Shown here: positions 3-20,500 of the stretch, piece by piece
Layout: each line of letters opens with the position of its first letter
Position numbering within the stretch: the stretch's first letter is position 1
Assembly (NCBI GenBank): GCA_907165135.1
Contig: OU015566.1
Coordinates: 11,098,001 to 11,162,000, forward strand
Direction: 5' to 3'
Origin: Oikopleura dioica
Lineage: Eukaryota; Animalia; Chordata
DNA: 64,000 bases
Made by a program: the position numbers and the translations under genes
The notes under the pieces: generated by a model
The model's database searches: none
The model's input: the letters and a program-made list of their open reading frames with translations, nothing else
What the model was told of the DNA's origin: nothing

Positions 3-3000
3 GGCCAAGTAGCAGCAACATTTGCCTCTGCTGCCGTCTATTTCCAAGCTGATGACCAGCAGCTATCTCAAGAGCTATTTAATCGGTCGGTTATCATGAC
101 TAGAAGCTGTTTCGAGAACCATGGCTATCTGCACAATGCGATTCCAGAGCTGAAAGAATACTACAAAAGCTGGCATATTGCAGACGAACATGTTTATGCA
201 GCTCTTTGGGTCCATAAAGCGGCCGTTGTTCTAGGCAACGAATCAATTGCGGAAGAAATGAAGGCCTTGGCGTTTTCATGGGAAGAACGAGCAATCAACG
301 GGGATATCGAATACAACACAATTTGGTGGGAAGGCGAATCCTTCAACTGGGACTCTAAACATCCCGCGATTCATTATCTCTTCAGTAATTTATTCGACAA
401 CGAGCCGAGCAAAGAAAGGTTCGAAAAATTCAAGACCTCGATTTTTAGACGGGAAAGGACAGAAAAGGGATACATTTGGATCTCAAAATGGGGCTCGACA
501 AGGCACAATGCGAATGCAATGTTTTTGCTCGCTTTGGATGCAAGAGATCAAGAAGACTTTGGTTTAATTCAGGAAGTCAAAGGGCAGATATATTATCTTC
601 TGAATGGACCTGTCATTGATGGAAAAACTGGGTCGTATTTGATAGGATACGGCGATGTCTATCCATCGGAGCCCCATCATCGGGGCTCATCGTGCAACGG
701 TGCTGAAGACTTCTGCGTTGAGGGAAATAATACAGAAGCTGTTTGGACACTCTACGGTGCTCTCGTTGGTGGAGCAGACACAGTCACAGATGTATTTATC
801 AATGACAGAAAAAACTGGATAACAAACGAAGTGGCACTTGATTACAACGCTGGTTTCCAATCAACTCTCGCGGGCCTGATTGCGCTCGAAGACAAACTTA
901 CGACCACAACTACCACAACAACGACTTCAGCTACTCTTTCAACGACCGAAGCGCCAAGACCAACACAAGAACTTGGCTTTCAAACACTCACGTTTGTATC
1001 TTACGGTAAGCGATTCGACGAAACTCAAGACATGCAAAAACGAACGCTAGAAGAAGGAAAGTACTTCAGAACTCTCATCGGTGATTTTTCGGACGAGTAC
1101 AGCAATCCTTGGCCACTAGAGAGATTTGAAGAACTTGAGCGGACAGAAATGCGCTGGTGCTTCAAACTTTTTGGGGAGCGTTTATTAGTTGGCCATAAAA
1201 GTGGAGTTTGGATTCACGACGGAAGTGAATCAAATTGGACGTCTTTGACTGATGGCCTCATCCTCGATCCTCTTGATTTCTTTGACGGCTCATCAATCGA
1301 TCAGGAATATCTTGATTACGTCGGCGTTGAAAGCTTCTTTCCGACGGTTGACTGGCCCTTTCTGACAAAAGAGCTCAAGAGAAGCTTATCATGCGAAGTT
1401 CATATGGGCAAAATCTTCTTTTGCGGGCTTCATGAAGGGAAAACATGCGTAGTTTTCAATGAAGATCTTGAATTCGAGACATTTTTTGAAACGAAAATTG
1501 AGCGTGATGGCGGCGCTCTTGTTTCCTACAAGGATAAGCTACTCTTCATTGGTGGTCAAAAGCAAGAAAACACCCTAGGAGCACGTGGAATTACTGAAAA
1601 TCGAAAAAGAAGGCAAGTTGGAATGCAAAATTTCCTATCCGGACTTAGCACTTTCCTCGGAACCAAGGAAGCAGAGCGACAAAATTCACCACTCAAGGAT
1701 GTCCTCGATCTCTATGGTGATGTAGAAGTCATAACTTTTCACCATAACGATATCAACAACAAGACAATAACATTTGGACCGGATCTTCCCCCACAGTTTC
1801 AACCTTCAACACCGCATGATGCTGTTTGTGTTTTCAACGAAAATATCTTTATCGTCACAAAAACTCGTAATGACGACGATCCTCTTCAATATGAAACTCA
1901 TCTTCTGTCAATTGACAATTTGAGTATTGACACAAGCTGGCAGTCCTACAGAAACTTGTTTCTTGAGAAAAGGGAAAATATGACGATGGTTCCTTATCAG
2001 GGAAAGCTGATGATTCTTGGAGGTGCTTATATTAAACCGTTTAACAAATTAGCCCCGCCTTCTCCACCACCAAATGAGTTTATTCTATTTGATGAGAAAA
2101 CAAAGCTGCCAAGCAAGGTAGAAAAAGAGCCTCAACTCATGATATTAGCGGGATCATTTGGAGTTGTGAGGTATCCTCCGGGTGAATTCGGAGAGTGGAA
2201 CTCTTGGAGTGAATGTTCCATCACTTGTGGGACTGGCATTGTCACCCGGGAAAGATATTGTTACTCGAAACTCGTCAAACTCGTAGGAGACGCCAGGAAA
2301 GGGTTTTTTATTGAAAACAACAGACAGACATAACTGAATAGTTCAGCATGAATCAATTTGTTATGCTCATATAAATACATGGAATGTAGAATAAATTTTT
2401 AAGGATGAAATAATAAATATTTTTATTCTGATTTTTGCTATTTTGTTATTTTTTTGTCTTCTTTTTTTGTATCATAATGATCTCGTATTTTTTCATGTTT
2501 TTGCTATGGAGTTCTCATGCATTTCTTTTCATCTTTTTTTCAGTCAATAACGGCACTTCTCATCTTTCGATGGAAGATAGAAGTCATTTCTTCCGACAAT
2601 ATCTGACGATTCTCCTTAATTTTCAATCTTCATTAAATCTCAAATTTTCAAGTTGCCTTCTTCAATGTTCAATTTCGTGACGTTTTTGATTGCAGGAGCA
2701 AAATAGTTCATGCTACCCATAAAGTTCTGAAATCTTGGGATAAATTCCGCAACTTGTGCTTCTGTTTCTCAAACCGAGTAACGATCAGTCCTTATATCTT
2801 TTAGACTTTTCGTTACTCACAGTCCTAAATAAGCTTTTTCATTCTTCAAAATATTTGCAATGACTTCGGCAACAACAGCCATATCTAAGTAAATAGACGA
2901 TACAATATTTTAGAAAATTTTAAATATTACCCTGAAATTGATTACTAACATCTGTATCTAAAAATTGTTGAACACTTTCAACATTTGCGATCTCATTTCG

Positions 3001-6000
3001 AAGATGAAACTCTGCATCAGCCAGTGTATATTTCGACCTGTCTCTTGGGTGTTGCCCTGTTCTTGATGCTGATAAAGCGGCTGTTGTGTTCCATATTTGT
3101 ACTCTTGAATCTCGTAAAATTTTATTGACTTCATTTATGTCATACACTGAGCTCATTTTCGCAACTCACTTTTAGACTTAAACTTGTAGTATTCTGACTG
3201 ACTGAATAGCAACGACCCGTAATATTTACTCATGGCCATAAAAAAGACCGTTATTTGCAAACTCAACAACACACGCCTCTCAATTTAAATTTATCATGTC
3301 TTTATATAATGCTATAGGAAATTTTTGAAAATTTTTCATATAGTTCATGCTTCCATTATCAAAGAAAAAATCTTCCCAAGATTCGAGTGTGGGAAAGATC
3401 CAGAGGAGAGCAAGCCTTGCAACACTCAAAAATGTCCTTCTTGGTCGAAATGGTCAGAATGGGATACATGTTCGTCTTCATGTGGTTTTAAAGGAATGCA
3501 GACTCGGACAAGACGCTGTAAACAAGGTGAAATTGGCGAGATCGGCTGTCACGAGGAAGATCAAGACATTCCAAAGTTCGCCCAGAATATCAACTCAACT
3601 TTTCAAAGAGGAGAATGTAATCGTGAGTTTTGTCCGATCATTCCAACGACCCAACTGTGGACTGAATGGTCTGAGTGCACAAGACAATGTGATGGAGGGG
3701 AAAGGATGAGAGCTGCACTAAAATGCACAGAACAAGCTAGCGAAAATAAACCTAAAGACAAATCCAAAAAGGATAAAAAGAAAAAGAATAAAGGCAGACG
3801 AGAAGCTGAAGAGTTAGATTTGCTCGAGTTTCTTGATGATCTCGAGGCGGAAAACGAAACTGTTCCAGAACCTCCTTGCTTGCCACCTGCAAAGCTTGTC
3901 AACTTCAACGAAACAGAAAGATGCAACGCTCAACCTTGTTCAAGATGGGCGCTTTGGAGCCCTTATACCCCGTGTTCTGCTACATGTGGCGATGCAACAA
4001 AATCTCGACAGAGATTTTGTCGACATGGGGAAATTGGAGAAGCAGATAATTGTCCATCGGAAGGTGCAAAGGAGATCATTGCTTGTGATCTTGATGAGTG
4101 CCCTTACCTCGGTGAATGGGAAAATTGGAGTGATTGTAGCAGAACATGTGGCTCAGGCGCTAGAATAAGGAAAAAACCATGTATAAATGGAAACATTGGA
4201 GAGATCGGTTGTGATTCAGCGGAAGCAACAGAGCAAATCTCTTGTGCGACGCATTATTGCCCGATTTATTGGGGTGAGTGGTCGGACTACTCAGAATGCA
4301 GTAATTCTTGTGGGAAAGGAGTCAGAGTAAAAACACGCGCATGTCAAAATGAGCTCGAAGATGTCACCTGCCCCGGCGCAGGAAATATCACAGAGGAGTG
4401 TTTTGACGGTTATTGCTCTGGTGGATCATTTTCCCCTGAATGGGCAAGCTGGGGTGAATGGGGAGAGTGCTCAACAACGTGTGGCCCGGGGCTGCAATCA
4501 AGGTTGAGAAACTGCACTGGGGACGCCGTTGGATCAGTATCTTGCCCATACGATGATGAACAACAGACTGGCAAATGCGAAGTACACGGATGCCCTCAAT
4601 GGTCACTCTGGAACTCTTGGCAGCCATGCGATCTTGACTGTGAGGATCCGGAAGTCAGTTCACGGTTCCTTATTGGCTCTAGAATTAGGAGACGAGGCTG
4701 TGTTGAGTGCCCGATGGATACTTTCGTTTGCATCAAGCCTTCAAATGCCACTGTTTGTGCTGATTTTTGGGCGGAAAATAATGCAACATCGATCGAAACA
4801 GAAGAATGCAGATGTGAAAACATTCAAGAGGGGTCCTCAGAAGGTTCTGGAAGTGGAGATGAGGAATATGAAATTTCCATGGAAATCGATACAACCACAC
4901 GCCCTTCAGTTACTACACAGTCTCTTGCTTCTTATCTGTCAAATATTCAGAGCTTTTTCAGTAGCGAAGATGAAAGCCAACGAATTCGATCACTGGCCCC
5001 TTCTTGGGGAACCTGGATGGAATGGACAAAGTGCTCAAAAACTTGTGACCTTGGAGAACGAACACGATATCGCCCCTGTTCAAATGGAAATATCGGTGAT
5101 ACTGATTGTCCTCTCGCAGAATCATTCGAACAGGAAAGTTGTCAACTTAATGTTTGCCGGGGTGAGTGGCTCAGCTGGGGTAATTGGGGAAGATGCTCCG
5201 CAAGTTGCGACGATGGTGTTAGAAGTCGCACAAGAATGTGCAAGGATAAGAATAAATTCGGCTTGCCAGGTTGCCAAAAACGAGCTGCAATAGAAATGGA
5301 AAAATGTTCCGATCGCCCTTGTAGCTACTGGAACAACTGGACTGAGTGGTCGCGTTGCAGTTCATCTTGCGGAAGTGGGGTTTCAACAAGAATGAGAAAT
5401 TGTGATGCGACTGAAAATATACAAGAAAATTGTATTGGAAATAGTCTTGAAAGTAAAACTTGTTTTATCCCAGAAGAAGATTGCCTTGCGGATATCGAAG
5501 AAGTAAGTTGGATGCCTAAGCAAATGCTTGCTTTTGGCCCTGCAGAATTTAGCCCCATTACGTTTACAAGCACCACCACCAAAGCAACTACTTCCACAAC
5601 AACTACTTCGACAACACAGTCAAAAACTCAAACAACGACTTCAACTTCAACTTCGTTGTAAACTACAGTGGCAACATGGACATGGGATGAGTGGACAAGT
5701 TGGAGTCAGTGCACACTTCCATGTGATGATACATTTTCTAGGTCTTTTAGAACTCGCTCTTGTTTTACTGGAGAGTGCCCAAAACAAGCTTCGGTCGAGT
5801 CAAGAATTTGCACAGATCGAGAGTTTTGTGACTACATGGACGCAGATTCTTCACTTTCTGACATGGGGATCGACTATTCATTCGATGATGACGAAGAAAA
5901 CCCCCTATCTACAGAAATCACTGCTGCTCCAACAAGACAGAGAATAATTTGGGAAGAATGGGGCCAGTGGACTCCTTGTGATCGAACATGCGACGAAGGG

Positions 6001-8370
6001 CATCGAGAGCGATTCCGAACTTGCCAAGATCGTGATCTCTGTCCGACTGGAAGCTATGAAACTGAAGAATGCGACCTTGGCTACTGCGCTAGAATGACTG
6101 GTTGGTCCCTTTGGACTCCTTGTTCGGCATCATGTGGAAAGGGAAATGTTCGAACGAGGAAAAACTACTGCGATCGAATTGGAAACTATGGAAAGGTCTG
6201 CCCAGAGGTGAAAAATATGACTGACGTTCTTATCGAGAAAGAACCGTGCCTTGCCTCTGAATGCCCCTATTTTGCTCAATGGTCTGTTTGGTCTAGCTGC
6301 GAATTTGATGGTCCTTGTCCTTTTACTGGTGGAAGAAATCGAACAAGAAAATGCAACTTCGGCTCTGTTGGCGACGAAGGGTGTATTGGAGATTTGATAG
6401 AGCTAGAGATCTGCCACCATGACGATTGCGGATACTGGTCGGAATGGGAGCCCTGGTCAAAATGCACGGCAACATGTGATGCTGGAAAGCGAGCTAGGCA
6501 AAGGATCTGCATCAACGGCAAAATTGGTGATGTAGGATGCCCTTACGACGAAGAAACTGATTTAGAACGATGTAATGATCAGGCTTGTCCTAAATGGTCA
6601 GTTTGGAGCTCATGGTCAGAATGCGAATCAGAATGTGGCCCTTCTCTGACATCAAAGAGTCGAGTTTGCCTTGGTGCTCCTTTTGGATCAAATGAATGTC
6701 CAGGGATTTCTGAAAAGACAAAAATCTGTGAATCAAAATGTCTTTCAAGCCAGAAATGCGAGGAAAATGTCTGCGTGTGCAATGAAGGAGCTGGCTGGGT
6801 ACTCGATACTGATCTAGACGAATGCGTTCGCCCGCAACCTTGTCTAGAATGCCACGACAACGCTGTCTGTAATGTTGATATGGCGACATGTCACTGTAAC
6901 AATGGCTATGAAGGCGATGGATACAGATGTTTCGACTACAACGAGTGTGCTCTTAAACTTCATAACTGTGACGAACTGGCAAAATGCAAGAATACAGAGG
7001 GAGGTTATGAATGTATTTGTCCAAATGGGTTCGAATCTGATTCTACGGGCAACAAATGTCTTGATATCAATGAGTGCTCTAGAGGAACTCATAATTGCCA
7101 CGCCCCGGAAGATTGGGCCGCGACGGGAGAAGAAACAAGGGTCAAATACGGACTCTACAGTTCCACTTGTACGAACAAAATCGGTGGGTTTGAATGCGAG
7201 TGCCTTGCGCCAGAGTTTTACGGAAACGGAACTCACTGCGAACAAGCGGCTCCGTCAATTATGGCAGCAGCCGTTTATCAATTAGGAAAGAAACTGGTTG
7301 TAGAGGACAATGCTCGTAGAACGATTGATATCGACACGTGTGGCGCAATTGACGGAACAATCGAAGTATCTGTTCTGCTCGCTGGCAAGGCTCCGTTCAA
7401 TATAGAAGTAGATACTATTGCCAATCCATATGCTGTGACTGCTCTGAATAACGTCATTTTTGATTCTCCCTTTGAAATGCGTCTGAGAATAGAAGGCATC
7501 ACCTCCGAGCCACTGCATGTTGACGATGAAATTTATTTGGTGAATGTTTCCGACTATCAGTACAGTACCGAATTCAAAGGAAGCGATCTGCCTATCAAAG
7601 CAAACACAACGACTCAGTTCCAACTTCGAATTGGAAATCGAAAATGCCTTCAGCTTTCCAAATTTTCAACAGCAAAGTCGGTTAACTCAGATTCCTTGCT
7701 TTACCAAAAATTTGTCATTACAATCGACAAGCCTTCATCATCGCCCATCTTTGGACATATTATCAAGAAACTGCATCTTTTGAGCGAAAGCTTCTTTCAG
7801 AGCGACTTTAGATTTCTCGCGACCGAGACGATTGGAATCAGAAGTATTGGAAATGCAACTTCAATAGACAGTGTTTTCATATTTGAATCTGACGATGCAG
7901 CGACAAACGCAAAGTCTGTCCCTGAAATAACAAAAGACTTTGTGGCAATTTTCTTGGATTACGTTGTCGAAGAATTTGCGCTCAATCGAGAGTCTGTAAA
8001 AATCGAGCTTCTTGGTGAAGCAAAATCGCCTTCTGGAGTATTTTTGATTCTTCTCACCGCTGTATTTGGCATCATAATAATAAGCGCGTCGAGTTTTATT
8101 TCCTTCTGCACTTGGCCGACGAATTTCACAGTCTTGAACGAATCTGGAAGAACGGAAGCAGACAGTCAATCTGTGATCTCTTTCTTGTCCGGGCCGCTCA
8201 TTTTACTACTCGAGGCTACAGTGACAAGTTGGGTTTGGGTCGACTACTCCTCTTTTGGAGCGCCATTTTTGACCAAATCTGAAGCACTCAGCACTTGTTT
8301 ACTCATAAGGAACAGGTTCAATCTTTATCGAGTTTTATTCTCTCTCTTATTTAGAGAAACAGTTAATTGA
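3..8370 (+). CDS. Giant mosaic type I membrane protein (5' part outside window): GH9 endoglucanase C-terminal half, Thr-rich linker, kelch-like repeats, 17 TSP1 repeats, EGF/EGF-Ca repeats, uncharacterised (possibly SEA-like) region, TM helix. Interrupted by a ~1.1 kb intron (~2267-3380) and an in-frame TAA at 5659-5661
   Basis: Frame open from position 3 (GQVAATFASAAVYF). GH9 motifs PHHRGSSC and NEVALDYNAGF are present, as are GG-containing kelch-like segments (LLFIGG, LMILGG). WxxWxxC-type TSP1 starts run across ORFs 96-2333, 3325-5661 and 5668-8370 (the last two in the same frame). EGF-Ca starts DYNEC and DINEC; hydrophobic GVFLILLTAVFGIIII; AATAAA at 8376 just after the stop. Confidence 0.85.
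2820..3156 (-). CDS. Nested antisense gene of unknown function inside the GH9-TSP1 intron (first two exons supported; 3' end unresolved)
   Basis: ATG at 3156. ORF MSSVYDINE...SNQFQ joins in frame across a 46-nt GT-AG intron (2930-2885) to DMAVVAEVIANILKNEKAYLG, followed by a GTGAGT donor at 2820. Confidence 0.55.
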
Positions 8371-8518
8371 GCCTGAATAAAGCGCTGTTTTTGGCTTGGT
8401 TTTCTTGATATTTTTCTGCATTTGTAATGTTATCCGAGCGAGATATGCAGCGGAACTTGTCAATTTGCATTTCACTTTTGAAGTGACGATTTATTTAGTA
8501 ATATTAATTCTTTTCCAG

Positions 8519-9338: not shown

Positions 9339-11401
9339 TTATGCTTTATTTTTTCTTCGAATAAATTGAAGGCGAATATCATCTTTTGGAATTCTGAGGC
9401 CAGGATGGTCAGCAATATCCATATTTCCAGCAATCCTTAAAATATAAAAAGCAATTAAAATTGACAATATAAATAATTTCAACCTCTTAATCTCGAAATT
9501 CTCCACCATACTTGTCCCAAAAGCAAAGTACTCCTCGATCGCCAACGATTTACCGATGCAATTTCGAAGACCGACAGAGAAGCCGCAGACTTTTGGGTCA
9601 TTGACGAATTCTCCGTTCTCATCAATAAAACGATCTGGAATGAATTTTGAAGGCTCTGGGAAGTTTTTCGGATCATGCATCACCGCCGCAAGAGACCCTA
9701 GAATTAATTAAGAATGTTATAAAAACAGTAAATCACCGATGATTTGCGAGTTGTTCGGAAAAGTAAACCCTTTGACTTGCGTGTCCTCCGAGGCAACATG
9801 AACGAGCGTTTCTGCGATCGGATTCAACCTTCTGCTTTCCAACAAAACGGATCTCGTAAAAGGACAGTTCTCTTTTATCAGGTCATTGTCTTTTTCACGG
9901 GCAGACTTTAACTCTTCGTAAATTTTTTCCTGCACTTCTGGGTGGTCAGCAAGAACCAACGATAGCCAAGTCAGAGTGTTTCTTATGATTAATCATTATT
10001 AATAAATTATGATGAATGATTGCTTGCAAAGCGGCTTACGCTAAAGTATCGGTAGCAGCCAAGTAAAGCGCTACGATTGTAGCAGCAAGAGTGAAATATC
10101 CCCATTCAGGATCTCTTGATGCTTCGATTAGAAGGGTATCTAAACTCATATTTTAGTTGTAGCTCGGAAAAAAAATGAACAATACCTAGAAGATTTCTGG
10201 GATTTGCAGGGTCTAGGGTTTTTTGCTGCTCCTTGATAATCTAAAAAAGGACTTTACTTCAAATTTATTGCATCTAAAACATACTTTGAAAACATAACTG
10301 TGAAAAAGCGGCAAAGCATCTTCAAAGTGTTTTAGTGGCGTTTTCAGCCAAAGTTTGTTGTAGAAGTCACTTTGGCTGATCTTTTCATGGTTTTCATGGT
10401 TTTTTTTTATCTAATTTAGAGAATTACTCATCATCATTATTTTCGTTTTTAAGAGTTAATTGCACAACCAATGTCCAAAGGGGAAGAGCATTGTTGCAAA
10501 TGCACTTCAAGATAAAGTGCAAAACTCCGACGAAAAAACTATCAACGTAGTCAGCAATTTTCAAAAATTCGGGATCTTCGAAGTCGTAATTTATTCCAAA
10601 GGCAAGTCCAGAAGTAACATTGATGCTTCCGTTCATGAAAATTCTTCTTGGGTCTATTCCCGAAGGATCTGATCCTAGTCGCTCGAGATGAAGACATACA
10701 TTTTCCGTCGACGCTTGAATGATTTCTGCGAGCTTATTTTTCCCGACAAGACGCTATAAAATCCATTCAAAATAAAAGCCCCAACTCAGAAAACTACCTT
10801 CATCGTATCATGCCATTGAGCCCTGATTTTCTTGTGGAACTGATCATAACGTCCTTCAGCGATTCCGGCCAAATTTCCAACGCCATTCTTGAGCAGCTGG
10901 TCATTTTCATCCAATATAGATTTTGCAATCTCGTGGTAGTCTTTTCTCCGCAGCATATTTTTGATGGTACATTCAAATCTCTCTGAAAACTGACGGTTCG
11001 ACATTGAACGTTTTGAGAAGGCTTCTTTCATGATTTCAAAATCGGTGATGACGTAAAAATTACTTAGAAAAGTTATCTGGGAAATGTTCTGTTAGGCACT
11101 AAAATAGGCCGCTAAATAGGAGCTTCCTAACTTGTTTCCTGAAAGTCGATCCAGGAAAAAAATGCGGCCTGAAAATCTTCGGCAATGTTCCTTCTTCAAG
11201 TGCATTTTTGATAACCTTAAAATTCTCATCCCTCGTTTGTGGATACGGAAAAGTCGGAATCGGATGAAACACTGTATTCTTCAAAATTATATAAGCGATC
11301 TTGTATATTCCATACGCCACGGCTACTGCTCCGATTTCGTAGAGCAAATCTCCATCTCTGTCGAATAAAAAATAATGGAGCTGTTCTCTCAGATTATCCA
11401 T
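9339..11401 (-). CDS. Cytochrome P450 (CYP2-clan-like), multi-exon
   Basis: Heme motif FSVGLRNCIG, ExxR (LLESRR), PERF-like FIPDRF, I-helix LYLAATDT, and an N-terminal membrane anchor followed by a Pro-rich hinge. Confidence 0.93.
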
Positions 11402-17582: not shown

Positions 17583-20500
17583 ATGAAAGTCGCGATTCGA
17601 ATGTGGTTACTCGCACTCGTCGGGGCGAGTTTTCCTAATTTAATCCCACCAAAATACCTCCACTTCAAAGGCAATACTTGGCAATGGGCCATTAAGGTTA
17701 GCTCGATTGTTTCGACCCTTTTCAGAACTCTAAAAATGCGCTTAGTTGCGAGCAAGCGATATCAACTCAACCCGTATCCTCTTCGACGAGCTGGCGGAGC
17801 AGATTGCCCGCGAGCACGATCTCCTCAATCACGGACAAGTTGGCGAGCTCATCGGTCACTACCTCTTTACTCGAAGGCCGGACGAAGAATCGACTGATCT
17901 GAGGGAGTTCCAGGCACGCGCTATAAAATTATCTTGTATTAGTCAGTTCAAGTTGTTCTTTCAAATCTTATTTATGAGATCAAAAACAAGAAACGTTTCC
18001 TAAATTTGATAGCGTGGGAATAAGTTGGAGCAAAAGCTCAAGCGGCATCCTCATGTCGAATACTACTCGCCACAGGTGCTCTTAAACCGGAAGAAACGAT
18101 ACTATGTTCCAAAGGCGCATGAGGTAATTTTCCTTTTAAAATTTAAGGACTGCCCTAACCGTAATTATCATAAATGTCGTCATCAAAATGTAGGTCAATA
18201 AAATCATCAAATTAAGCAACGCATATTTTGAGCAAAGACATTTGTTAACTGATTCTAGCGCTTCATCGAAATGTCAATCGAAGAGCGTGTCCCAAAACGC
18301 GCACTGCAAAACATCAGCATCTCAACAAAGCCCCGCGCTCATAAACTAACGGACAAGCAGTTCAAAACGCTGACAAGTCTCGTGCCAAAGTTCGAAGACC
18401 CGGAGTTCGCAAATCAATGGCATCTGTTCAACCGGCGATTTCCCGGAAACGACTGCAACGTCACGGGCGTATGGGAACGGGTTGCAAATCGAAAAGGGCG
18501 ATTCAAAGTTATGATTTCTTGACATTTGAGCGTTATGTCAAAGCGGCAGTTTTTATGATTAAAACTGAGAAAGATAGATTACAATTTTCAATTGCCTAAA
18601 GTTCAATTGTAGGAAAATCTTCTGTAGTAAAGATCATCAATTCGTATTTTCCCATTTTACGAGAAATTTTAAGCTAATAATAAGGGACATTCTTAGTTCA
18701 TCTGAGCGCGAGATCGTTAAATGACCAGTAAATGAACCCTTAAAACATATTCTGATAGTTTATCTCCTTTAATTATCTCGGAATTTGCTCTGCTCTTTCA
18801 AGCGCCCGAGCAGCGGTCTCCAAAAATGCTGTTTTTCGGTCTTTAACAATGCGCAAATTTTTCGGGCGCTGTCTGTTTCAGGCTGATGTCGAATTTTCCG
18901 CAATTAGGGTTAATTTCCTTCGCAGGAGGATTATCAGATTTCCAACCTTAATGAACAGGCGATGAACGTGACCGGAAGTGGCGTTACTGTCGCTGTGGTA
19001 GATGACGGCGTCCAGTGGGATCATCCAGATCTACTGGCCAATTACAATCCCAAGGGCTCCTTCGACCTCAACTCAAACGACGACAATCCGATGCCGCAAT
19101 ACGACGAAAACGAGGAAAACAAGCACGGCACGCGATGCGCTGGCGAAATCGCCGCCGTGCCCAACGACGTCTGCGGCGTTGGAGTTTCCTTTGGAGCCAA
19201 GTTCTCCGGAATCAGAGTTCTAGATGGTCCCATCACCGATTCGATGGAAGCCACGGCGTTTAACAAACATCTAGGTTAGATTTAATCTCGCCATTGCCGA
19301 GCAAAACGGATCGGTTCCGGCTATCTATCTATTTACGCTTATGTTGAAGATTTTAGAAGCTCAAACTTAGGTTATAAAATATGACTCTAAAGAACATTCT
19401 TTCTTCTTTCATTTTTAAAGTAAATTTAGATGTGAACGACATTTACTCATGTTCTTGGGGCCCGGAAGATGATGCAAAGACCCTTGACGGGCCGCATCCA
19501 CTCGCCCAAGCAGCACTCATTCACGGCGTAACCGCTGGTCGACGTGGCTTCGGTTCAATCTACATTGTTGCAAGCGGAAACGGCGGCAACGAAGGAGATA
19601 ATTGCAACTTTGATGGATATGCCAACTCAATCTACACGATCACCATTGGTGCCGTTGACGAACGAGGTGATATGCCTTACTATGCCGAGGAATGTGCGTC
19701 TATGCTGGCATCGACGTTTTCTTCGGGCAATCCGAGCGGCAGGGACACTAGAAAAATCGTCACCACTGATTGGACAATGGGCAGATCTGGCTCTGGAGTT
19801 GCTGGAGCGGGTTGTACCAGCTCTCACACTGGTACTTCTGCAGCTACTCCCTTAGCTGCTGGAATGGTCGCCCTTATGCTCCAGGTTTGTACTACGAGGT
19901 TCTTTGTTTAATGTTTTTATTGTCACGTAAAGTTGTTCCGGAATGAACCTATAAGATCAAACGCGCAGAACTTGTATTGACGCCAAACAAGATCGCAGAA
20001 AATCCTCGCAAAAATTTTGCATTGCAGATTTCTTAATAAAATTTGTTGCGGTCGATTAAAGCAGCTGTACCTTCGGCGCTCTAAAGACTGATGAGCCGAC
20101 AAGTAGACGTGGCTTTTTGAAAAAGATATTAAGGTGCGACCCTGTCTGACCTGGCGCGATGTGCAGCATATAATTGTTTATACGGCGCGGCACACGAAGG
20201 GATCCCATAAGCCGAAGAACGTGCGCTCCTGGTTCACTAATGCGGCCGGGCTGCAACACTCGGCACAGTACGGCTTTGGACTATTGGACGCCTGGCGACT
20301 TGTCAACGCGGCGAAGGTTTGGAGGACAACGCCCATGCTCACTTCGTTCTCTCCTCCGGAAGGGATTTATTTTTCACAAAAATACAAAAAGGAAAAGAAC
20401 CCATCCTCAAATATGCGTTCGCCAAATATAACGGCTAATGTTAGGCAATACAGTGGTTACTTGGAAAATAGTAATTGCATTAACAAAATTTCGATCGAAG

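What the first reader, a model, noticed from the sequence alone, without database searches (positions are those of the whole stretch)
3..8370. Membrane-tethered cellulase on a 17x TSP1/EGF stalk
Seen: one reading frame (after one intron and one in-frame stop) links a GH9 domain that keeps its HHR and NEVALDYNAG motifs to kelch-like repeats, 17 TSP1 repeats, EGF repeats and a TM helix, over 2,500 aa within the window alone. Established: tunicates make cellulose, appendicularians secrete a cellulose-based house, and animals have GH9 enzymes. Inference: a GH9 held far from the cell surface on a long adhesive stalk could trim or anchor cellulose fibrils during house or tunic assembly and release, much as plant KORRIGAN-type membrane GH9 works alongside cellulose synthase. 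I do not know of a described animal GH9 with this architecture.
Basis: partly seen in the sequence, partly recalled or inferred. Interest (0 to 1): 0.78.

Follow-up and report, generated by a model that had tools for sequence, protein, structure and literature searches.

The report
Giant membrane-anchored cellulase of Oikopleura
In the larvacean Oikopleura dioica, a cellulase already catalogued as GH9-5 is very probably only the tip of a roughly 2,960-residue cell-surface protein on a long stalk, which both public annotations cut into three or four false genes; this still needs transcript proof.

Summary
The window is Oikopleura dioica OKI2018_I69, chromosome OU015566.1.

**Observation.** It holds. 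One + strand reading line carries the C-terminal two-thirds of a GH9 domain, a Thr-rich linker, a weakly kelch-like region, 17 TSP1-like repeats, 3-4 EGF modules and a transmembrane helix. It is broken by one 1.08-kb gap and one in-frame TAA (5659-5661).

**Upstream.** The same ORF continues outside the window. It supplies a signal-peptide-like start, MAM, LDLa, mucin and the GH9 N-half with the DAGD aspartates.

**One gene, by comparison only.**
- The gap splits one TSP1 repeat into complementary halves in Okinawa, Bergen and a distant Tara Oceans relative, where the gap is about 66 nt.
- A GA-AG intron keeps the frame in both O. dioica lineages.
- The downstream part has no start codon or signal peptide of its own.
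- Every segment is under strong purifying selection.

**Weaknesses.**
- No RNA junction was seen; the available RNA runs were from a diverged lineage.
- The TAA is absent in Bergen, but Bergen has its own 1-nt frameshift.

**What was known.** The GH9 head is listed as GH9-5 in a 2026 preprint, and other GH9 mosaics were noted by this scan elsewhere in this genome. The stalk-and-anchor architecture is not described, and I found it nowhere else.

**Function.** Trimming or holding house cellulose is inference.

The parts
3..866 (+). C-terminal two-thirds of the GH9 catalytic domain. The N-third, with DAGD, lies upstream of the window in the same ORF (P0001 residues 395-539).
   Evidence: PF00759 E 6e-41 on the window piece and E 5.5e-90 over profile positions 4-443 of 444 on P0001. 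The alignment to termite endoglucanase 1ks8 shows the DAGD pair, HHR and the Glu of NEVALDYNAG conserved.
891..968 (+). Thr/Ser-rich mucin-like linker after GH9.
   Evidence: Translation. A Thr run is also present in Bergen and in the distant relative P0269.
978..2186 (+). About 400-residue beta-rich region, probably a divergent kelch-type propeller.
   Evidence: Kelch_6 E 8.8e-4, below Pfam's cutoff. Atlas feature hits are all kelch-like at 0.82. The profile against PDB gave five weak hits, all Kelch domains. The AlphaFold model is unusable at pLDDT 37. pN 0.14 against pS 0.71-0.77 versus Bergen.
2187..2296 (+). N-terminal half of TSP1 repeat 1, at the end of exon 1.
   Evidence: PF00090 positions 1-27 of 49. 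It matches positions 1-26 of an HMM built from this locus's own repeats, in Okinawa, Bergen and L003. Conservation with Bergen ends exactly after ...SKLVKLVGDAR.
2297..3380 (+). Proposed 1,084-nt GA-AG intron. An alternative GT donor at 2303 is in frame only in the Okinawa sequence.
   Evidence: The frame is preserved in both lineages only for GA-AG (window 2297-3380; L002 13944-15890), by my reading. The donor context AG|GAA fits the O. dioica GA-AG consensus (PMC7072748). The 24 codons before the acceptor are not conserved. No RNA joint was seen.
2544..3156 (-). Small gene nested in the intron on the opposite strand, annotated as 155 aa.
   Evidence: Gene call in L001. RNA reads pile up on nt 2692-2757 in runs X11 and X12. 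Its exons are conserved inside the Bergen intron.
3381..5560 (+). C-terminal half of TSP1 repeat 1, then TSP1 repeats 2-11 with Lys/Glu-rich and Ser/Thr-rich spacers.
   Evidence: PF00090 E 9.8e-63 with 9 stretches. The start matches HMM positions 32-50. 75% amino-acid identity to Bergen, pN 0.145 against pS 0.717. The first Met lies inside repeat 2 and there is no signal peptide.
5659..5661 (+). In-frame TAA inside a Thr/Ser-rich linker (about nt 5560-5680).
   Evidence: The Bergen ORF L002:15793-20829 is open across the equivalent linker. No in-frame G-N...AG intron can remove the TAA, by my reading. Contigs of other individuals break or diverge at 5581-5615.
5680..6750 (+). TSP1 repeats 12-17.
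   Evidence: PF00090 E 2.2e-29 with 5 stretches. Motif count. 83% identity to Bergen, pN 0.092 against pS 0.845.
6751..7260 (+). Three to four EGF-like modules, two of them calcium-binding type. The last has a conserved 16-residue insertion.
   Evidence: PF07645 at 37.2 bits (cutoff 27) and PF12947. The insertion is identical in protein and differs at synonymous sites in Bergen, so it is coding and not an intron.
7261..8034 (+). Juxtamembrane region with no Pfam match. Its last 110 residues (about nt 7693-8022) model as a SEA-like alpha/beta sandwich.
   Evidence: No Pfam or PDB sequence hit. AlphaFold pLDDT is 53-82 for residues 172-281 only. The top Foldseek hit is a MUC16 SEA domain (8vm1_A, E 2.3e-4); 1ivz and 7sa9 give TM 0.43-0.44. 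88% identity to Bergen.
8035..8110 (+). Transmembrane helix.
   Evidence: Kyte-Doolittle 19-residue mean up to 2.55. Nearly invariant between lineages.
8111..8382 (+). Conserved 86-residue tail with a second, weaker hydrophobic stretch (about nt 8170-8230), the stop at 8368-8370 and AATAAA at 8377-8382.
   Evidence: pN 0.111 against pS 0.645. The Bergen ORF ends at the equivalent place.

Best explanation
Window 3-8370 is the larger part of one O. dioica gene of about 12.3 kb. It has two exons and encodes a type I membrane glycoprotein of about 2,965 residues.

Domain order: signal-peptide-like start, MAM, LDLa, mucin linker, catalytically intact GH9 endoglucanase, mucin linker, kelch-like propeller, 17 TSP1 repeats, 3-4 EGF modules, a SEA-like juxtamembrane module, one transmembrane helix, and a conserved 86-residue tail.

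The two exons are joined across a 1,084-nt GA-AG intron that holds a nested antisense gene. Gene predictors miss this intron, which would explain why both public annotations break the locus into 3-4 models.

Inferred mechanism: the protein sits in the apical membrane of house-secreting epidermal cells and holds an active beta-1,4-glucanase far out in the nascent cellulose and oikosin layer. From published repeat sizes, recalled rather than tested here, the reach is of the order of 100 nm. There it would trim, edit or release cellulose fibrils made by CesA2. The TSP1/EGF rod may also bind matrix.

The TAA in the Okinawa assembly is most likely an allele of the sequenced, highly heterozygous individual, or an error. 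That copy would give a secreted, anchorless 2,063-residue form.
For: **Shown by sequence.**
- One uninterrupted 3.9-kb ORF (P0001, 1,315 aa) carries MAM/LDLa/GH9, the kelch-like region and the first half of a TSP1 repeat.
- Exon-1 ends match positions 1-26, and exon-2 starts match positions 32-50, of a TSP1 HMM built from the locus itself. This holds in Okinawa, Bergen and the Tara contig L003.
- In L003 only about 66 nt and one in-frame TGA separate the two halves, which is too little for a separate gene.
- Amino-acid conservation stops at ...GDAR and resumes at FECG.
- GA-AG keeps the frame in both lineages. GA-AG introns are frequent in O. dioica, with an AG|GAA context.
- The nested gene is conserved in the Bergen intron.
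- The downstream models start inside a TSP1 repeat with no signal peptide.
- Bergen has one open 1,670-codon ORF from the acceptor to the tail.
- pN is 0.07-0.18 against pS 0.65-0.85 in every segment.
- GH9 catalytic residues are intact.
- A transmembrane helix and a polyadenylation signal are present.

**From the literature.** The O. dioica GH9 family is expanded, and members are expressed in cesA2-positive house-producing cells (bioRxiv 10.64898/2026.03.31.715263).
Against: - No RNA read crossing the junction was obtained. The two RNA runs laid were under 90% alike to the window and gave no joints.
- Both public annotations keep the parts apart.
- The Okinawa sequence has an in-frame TAA that no plausible intron removes. 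The run that may be the assembly's source holds 1.00 of the sampled words, so the TAA is probably real in that animal.
- Bergen has a 1-nt frameshift in the kelch-like region.
- The splice phase inferred for L003 (GG-AG, phase 1) differs from that in O. dioica (GA-AG, phase 2).
- An AATAAA lies about 60 nt after the exon-1 read-through stop, so a short secreted isoform cannot be excluded.
- Enzyme activity, cell type and membrane location are untested.
Confidence: 0.62

Rival explanations
1. The annotations are right in substance. A secreted MAM-LDLa-GH9-kelch protein ends at the stop at 2331-2333, and the TSP1/EGF/TM part is a separate neighbouring gene, possibly a downstream operon member.
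For: Separate gene models in both the OKI2018_I69 and Bergen annotations. No splice joint in the laid reads. AATAAA at about nt 2391, shortly after the stop.
Against: Exon 1 would end in half a TSP1 repeat and the next gene would begin with the missing half, in three taxa. The downstream ORF has no initiator Met before the inside of repeat 2 and no signal peptide, although it is made only of extracellular modules. In L003 the two parts are about 66 nt apart. The residues after GDAR are not conserved.
Confidence: 0.12
2. In the Okinawa lineage the TAA is real and fixed. The gene then makes a secreted, anchorless GH9-kelch-11xTSP1 protein, and the downstream TSP1/EGF/TM part is a recently stranded relic. 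More broadly, the locus is decaying in both lineages.
For: TAA at 5659-5661 with no removable intron. The likely source run holds all sampled words. Bergen carries a different lesion, a 1-nt frameshift.
Against: The part after the TAA is the best conserved of the whole gene: 83-88% identity, pN 0.07-0.11 against pS 0.65-0.85. Bergen is open across the linker. The sequenced animal has about 3.6% heterozygosity and the assembly a 1.3% estimated error rate (PMC8008620). Another individual's contig shows a different linker sequence from 5615 onward; its 30 shown letters read Thr/Ser-rich and stop-free in the gene's frame.
Confidence: 0.15
3. The architecture is as described, but the GH9 head works mainly as a cellulose-gripping module that anchors the house rudiment to the epithelium until release, not as a cutting enzyme.
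For: There is no separate carbohydrate-binding module in the protein.
Against: Both catalytic aspartates, the catalytic Glu, HHR and the aligned aromatic residues are kept in both lineages. The GH9 part has pN 0.10.
Confidence: 0.1

Closest known systems
O. dioica GH9-5 (GSOIDG00008975001), one of 17 or more GH9 genes listed in bioRxiv 10.64898/2026.03.31.715263, SI2
   Same: It is the Bergen ortholog of the head: 79% identity to the window piece. P0002 begins with the residues printed for GH9-5 in SI2 as far as SI2 shows them, and has the same MAM-LDLa-mucin-GH9 order.
   Different: The catalogued model stops at 1,040 aa, at a 1-nt frameshift. It lacks the rest of the kelch-like region, all TSP1 and EGF repeats, the transmembrane helix and the tail.
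Plant KORRIGAN-type (class A) membrane-bound GH9 endoglucanases
   Same: A GH9 catalytic domain without a cellulose-binding module, tethered to the plasma membrane of a cellulose-synthesising cell. It is proposed to edit nascent fibrils. The comparison is made in PMC10986139 and from my own knowledge.
   Different: KORRIGAN is a type II protein with an N-terminal anchor next to the enzyme. Here there is a signal-peptide-like start, and the anchor is C-terminal, about 2,000 residues and more than 20 modules away. The GH9 is of animal type: the closest solved structure is termite 1ks8.
Animal secreted GH9 endoglucanases (termite NtEgl 1ks8; mollusc, crustacean and Ciona GH9 with CBM2 or CUB)
   Same: The catalytic domain aligns end to end (E 2.2e-75 to 1ks8) with the catalytic residues conserved. 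Other animals also add one or two modules.
   Different: None of the best 120 hits of the word search except the window's own model carries TSP1 by precomputed Pfam, and the six long hits of the exhaustive search that I scanned carry none. The long GH9 proteins found are bacterial.
THSD7A/B-like type I membrane proteins (long TSP1 arrays, one TM, short tail) and SEA-bearing membrane mucins
   Same: A rod of many TSP1 repeats ending in a single transmembrane helix, and a SEA-like module next to the membrane as in MUC16. The THSD7 comparison is from my own knowledge.
   Different: Homology of the stalk to THSD7 was not tested. The SEA match is weak and the G/SVVV cleavage motif is absent. None of these proteins carries an enzyme at its tip.

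Membership tests
Glycoside hydrolase family 9 (PF00759) | Full-length match to the family profile above the curated cutoff. | tested here: met
   P0001: 303 bits (cutoff 27.7), profile positions 4-443 of 444. Window part: 141.6 bits.
Glycoside hydrolase family 9 (PF00759) | Catalytic base pair in the DAGD motif and catalytic acid Glu in the NEVA-DYNAG motif. | tested here: met
   GGFFDAGDSVKF and NEVALDYNAG align to the same motifs of 1ks8. They are also present in Bergen.
Glycoside hydrolase family 9 (PF00759) | Beta-1,4-glucanase activity. | not testable with these tools
   Needs a recombinant enzyme assay.
KORRIGAN-type membrane GH9 (plant class A) | Type II topology: an N-terminal transmembrane anchor directly before the GH9 domain. 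| tested here: not met
   The N-terminus is signal-peptide-like. The only strong hydrophobic helix is at nt 8035-8110, C-terminal to everything else.
KORRIGAN-type membrane GH9 (plant class A) | Physical or functional association with the cellulose synthase complex. | not testable with these tools
   Only an analogy. cesA2-positive cells express GH9 genes according to the preprint.
Thrombospondin type 1 repeat (PF00090) | Repeated profile matches above cutoff, with W-x-x-W and C-S-x-[ST]-C-G motifs. | tested here: met
   208.6 and 101.8 bits, with 9 and 5 stretches. 17 motif-bearing units.
Calcium-binding EGF (PF07645) | Profile match above cutoff. | tested here: met
   37.2 bits against a cutoff of 27.
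Kelch beta-propeller | Four to seven kelch blades recognised by a profile or by fold. | tested here: inconclusive
   Kelch_6 at 19.7 bits is below the cutoff of 25.3. Five weak PDB hits are all Kelch, E 0.02-0.85. The model has pLDDT 37.
SEA domain | Alpha/beta sandwich next to the membrane; G/SVVV autocleavage motif in cleaving members. | tested here: inconclusive
   Foldseek top hit is MUC16 SEA, E 2.3e-4, TM 0.34-0.44, on a model part with pLDDT 53-82. There is no Pfam hit, and I saw no G/SVVV motif in the translation.
MAM domain (PF00629) | Profile match above cutoff. | tested here: inconclusive
   Okinawa: 22.4 bits, below the cutoff of 26.4. Bergen ortholog: 30.7 bits, above it.
Oikosins (house structural proteins) | Detected in the house proteome, or expressed in defined oikoplastic fields. 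| not tested
   No cellulase or hydrolase is mentioned in the main text of the house proteome paper PMC3390340. Its protein lists were not searched by sequence.

The most novel reading that the evidence does not exclude
Larvaceans build their cellulose house with an animal-invented counterpart of KORRIGAN. This would be an active GH9 held about 100 nm above the apical membrane on a TSP1/EGF rod. Its almost invariant membrane-proximal tail couples it to the cellulose synthase or cytoskeletal template, and cutting or shedding it (SEA-like module, or anchorless alleles such as the TAA form) times release of the house rudiment.
Probability: 0.2. Interest if true: 0.8.

Novelty: new variant of a known kind. 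Interest (0 to 1): 0.55.

Why it matters
**Biology.** Tunicates are the only animals that make cellulose, and how larvaceans shape and shed a cellulose-scaffolded house every few hours is unresolved. A cell-surface-anchored, catalytically intact GH9 would be a concrete candidate for editing or releasing fibrils at the secreting membrane. It would be the animal analogue of the cellulases that work beside cellulose synthase in plants and bacteria.

**Annotation and expression atlases.** The result exposes an annotation problem: a GA-AG intron holding a nested gene splits one gene into 3-4 models in both reference annotations. In 3'-biased single-cell data, reads would then be credited to the anonymous downstream model and not to gh9-5. 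GH9-5 expression in published atlases may therefore be underestimated. Other O. dioica mosaic genes may be broken in the same way.

Tried and rejected
- **RNA evidence.** The single read-laying run used two oligo-dT RNA runs with the same species label. Nearly all reads were under 90% alike, so they come from a diverged lineage. They covered mainly the nested gene's exon and gave no joints. The run is uninformative about splicing, not negative evidence.
- **A short intron removing the TAA.** The annotated 50-nt GT-AG intron (5619-5668) breaks the frame and ends at TGA 5688-5690. No G-N...AG intron ending at 5668 is in frame. Rejected.
- **The long insertion in the fourth EGF as a hidden intron.** It is identical in protein and differs at synonymous sites in Bergen, so it is coding. 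Rejected.
- **AlphaFold of the kelch-like region** (6-row alignment): pLDDT 37, not used for fold search.
- **AlphaFold of the C-terminal 396 residues:** only residues 172-281 are usable.
- **Word searches.** The linker-flanking piece found nothing. The C-terminal region found only a Bergen-type metagenome contig. The TAA therefore could not be genotyped in other animals.
- **P0137,** a 3,420-aa GH9 protein, looked like a possible parallel but is a bacterial multi-domain cellulase.
- **L004,** from the distant relative, does not reach a GH9 domain, so the GH9-to-kelch link is shown only for O. dioica.
- **Pfam on 23-residue exon-2 starts** gave nothing. It was replaced by an HMM built from the locus itself.

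Full report
**Where the window comes from.** The first ORF piece retrieved a 100% identical 1,315-aa protein (P0001) on a 14.5-Mb record. That record is OU015566.1 of assembly GCA_907165135.1, Oikopleura dioica OKI2018_I69. Window position equals L001 position minus 11,615. The best foreign hit is P0002 at 79% identity, the O. dioica Bergen reference protein on FN653017.1 (locus L002).

**Checking the observation.**
- Translating the + strand gives an open frame from nt 3 to 2333. After a gap, a second open frame runs 3325-5661 and a third 5668-8370. The second and third share one frame and are separated by a single TAA at 5659-5661.
- Pfam finds GH9 (profile positions 154-443 of 444, E 6e-41) and the first 27 positions of a TSP1 repeat in piece 1.
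- It finds nine TSP1 stretches in piece 2, and five TSP1 stretches plus EGF_CA, EGF_3 and cEGF in piece 3.
- A motif scan finds 16 W-x-x-W/C-x-x-C units. One more degenerate unit (near nt 6260) I read by eye from the translation, giving 17. The strongest hydrophobic helix is at nt 8035-8110.
- The stop at 8368-8370 is followed by AATAAA at 8377.
Two corrections apply: the spliced reading gives 2,427 codons in the window, not over 2,500, and the kelch assignment is weak.

**The missing N-terminus.**
I tested this on P0001.
- P0001 has a short hydrophobic start, MAM (22.4 bits in Okinawa, 30.7 bits in Bergen), LDLa (31.4 bits), a Thr/Ser-rich stretch, and a complete GH9 domain (303 bits, positions 4-443 of 444).
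- The domain aligns end to end with termite endoglucanase 1ks8 (E 2.2e-75). The DAGD aspartates, HHR, the WG-x-x-R segment and the Glu of NEVALDYNAG are in place.

**One gene or several?** Both public annotations split the locus.
- Okinawa models: 1,315 aa, a 155-aa minus-strand gene, 714 aa and 1,077 aa.
- Bergen models: 1,040, 142 and 1,597 aa.

Several observations argue that this split is an artefact.
1. Exon 1 ends in half a TSP1 repeat and the next frame begins with the other half. An HMM built from ten complete repeats of this locus matches the exon-1 ends at positions 1-26 and the exon-2 starts at positions 32-50. This holds in Okinawa, in Bergen, and in a 2.6-kb Tara Oceans contig (L003) from a relative only 31-40% identical.
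2. Amino-acid conservation between Okinawa and Bergen runs to ...SKLVKLVGDAR, vanishes, and resumes at FECG. The 24 codons before the acceptor are not conserved.
3. An intron from GA (window 2297; L002 13944) to AG (window 3380; L002 15890) keeps the frame in both lineages. The GT at 2303 works only in Okinawa (my reading).
4. GA-AG introns are unusually common in O. dioica and have an AG|GA-A context, which the Okinawa donor (AG|GAA) fits (PMC7072748). Eleven per cent of OKI2018_I69 introns are non-canonical (PMC8008620).
5. In L003 the two halves are separated by about 66 nt with a single in-frame TGA, which leaves no room for a second gene.
6. The downstream frame has no Met until inside TSP1 repeat 2 and no signal peptide, although it consists only of extracellular modules. 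The annotated 714-aa model starts at that internal Met.
7. The intron's nested minus-strand gene is conserved in the Bergen intron.

I could not obtain RNA proof. The one read-laying run used RNA runs that turned out to be from a diverged lineage and gave no joints.

**The in-frame stop.**
- Bergen has one uninterrupted 1,670-codon ORF from the acceptor to the tail, so the linker is open there.
- In Okinawa, no in-frame G-N...AG intron can remove the TAA. The annotated 50-nt GT-AG intron (5619-5668) breaks the frame instead (my reading).
- The run flagged as the possible source of the assembly holds 1.00 of the sampled words, so the TAA is probably real in that animal.
- That animal had about 3.6% heterozygosity, and the assembly has a 1.3% estimated error rate.
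- Contigs from other individuals break or diverge within 5581-5615. For one of them, the 30 shown letters read Thr/Ser-rich and stop-free in the gene's frame.
- Bergen has its own lesion, a 1-nt frameshift in the kelch-like region, which is why its GH9-5 model ends at 1,040 aa.
- Against decay: every segment shows pN 0.07-0.18 with saturated pS 0.65-0.85, and the part after the TAA is the most conserved at 83-88% identity.

**The unnamed parts.**
- The roughly 400-residue region after GH9 gets only sub-threshold kelch signals: Kelch_6 E 8.8e-4, atlas features 0.82, and five weak PDB profile hits that are all Kelch domains. Its AlphaFold model is unusable.
- The 260 residues before the membrane have no sequence match, and no homolog outside O. 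dioica turned up in the word search, which saw only proteins of 218-693 residues.
- The last 110 of those residues model at pLDDT 53-82 as a beta-alpha-beta-beta-alpha-beta sandwich. Its best structural match is the MUC16 SEA domain. This is tentative, and I saw no G/SVVV cleavage motif.
- The 86-residue tail is almost invariant in protein but not at synonymous sites.

**What is already known.**
- P0002 begins with the residues printed for GSOIDG00008975001 (GH9-5) in SI2 of bioRxiv 10.64898/2026.03.31.715263, as far as SI2 shows them.
- That preprint reports that GH9 genes are expanded in O. dioica. It places some of them (GH9-10, GH9-15, a GH9-expansin) in house-producing cell fields.
- It says nothing about a TSP1/EGF stalk or a membrane anchor for GH9-5.
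- The house proteome paper does not mention a cellulase in its main text.
- Other notes of this scan, unchecked by me, describe several further GH9 mosaics in this genome, including a GH9 head on an EGF rod (s1-331741). A GH9 on a long extracellular protein may therefore be a recurring theme here, which tempers the surprise.

**Search for the same architecture elsewhere.**
- Among the best 120 word-search hits, only the window's own model combines GH9 and TSP1 by precomputed Pfam.
- In the exhaustive search of 1.84 billion representatives, the long GH9 proteins I checked are bacterial multi-domain cellulases. The multi-stretch hits on the query's TSP1 half were not domain-scanned, and none was reported with a GH9-region match.
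- These checks cover the best 150 hits only.

**Mechanism.**
- Shown: an intact GH9 active site, an N-terminal secretory-type start, a long array of extracellular modules, one C-terminal transmembrane helix, and purifying selection throughout.
- Inferred: a type I orientation with the enzyme at the distal end. From published sizes of TSP1 and EGF modules (my knowledge, not tested), the stalk would be of the order of 100 nm. Action would be on nascent house cellulose beside CesA2.
- The comparison with KORRIGAN is functional only, because the defining type II N-terminal anchor is not present.

I did not build, search or fold the joined, stop-bridged full-length protein.

Noticed in passing
window 2544-3156 (-), exon at 2692-2757: A small gene (annotated 155 aa, no Pfam family) is nested antisense in the intron. 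It is clearly transcribed: over 100 reads in run X11, from a diverged lineage. Its exons are conserved inside the orthologous Bergen intron.
   Followed up: partly
L002 13380-13417 (Bergen FN653017.1): A 1-nt frameshift in the kelch-like region truncates the catalogued GH9-5 model at 1,040 aa. The reading frame resumes immediately in another frame and stays conserved. It is either a sequencing error or a real lesion.
   Followed up: partly
L003 900-1000 (Tara Oceans contig, ERZ908079): In a distant relative, the same TSP1 repeat is split by only about 66 nt containing one in-frame TGA. The only in-frame G-N...AG solution I found is GG-AG (923-988), at a slightly different phase from that in O. 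dioica. The organism is unidentified, presumably another larvacean.
   Followed up: partly
window 5619-5690: The OKI2018_I69 annotation uses a 50-nt GT-AG intron here that shifts the frame and ends its 714-aa model at TGA 5688-5690. The next model starts at an internal Met (5836) and runs on to 9229, past the conserved stop and the AATAAA. Both look like predictor artefacts.
   Followed up: partly
window 8111-8367: The tail after the transmembrane helix is nearly invariant between lineages at the protein level despite many synonymous changes. It contains a second, weaker hydrophobic stretch (about 8170-8230). No known motif was recognised.
   Followed up: no
window 9339-11401 (-): A cytochrome P450 gene (PF00067 in the annotation) lies just downstream on the opposite strand. 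In Bergen the downstream neighbour is a lipase gene instead, so synteny breaks right after this gene.
   Followed up: no
window 18271-19911 (+): ORF pieces with subtilisin/kexin-type motifs (D-D-G, H-G-T-R-C, G-T-S), probably a proprotein convertase gene with short introns.
   Followed up: no
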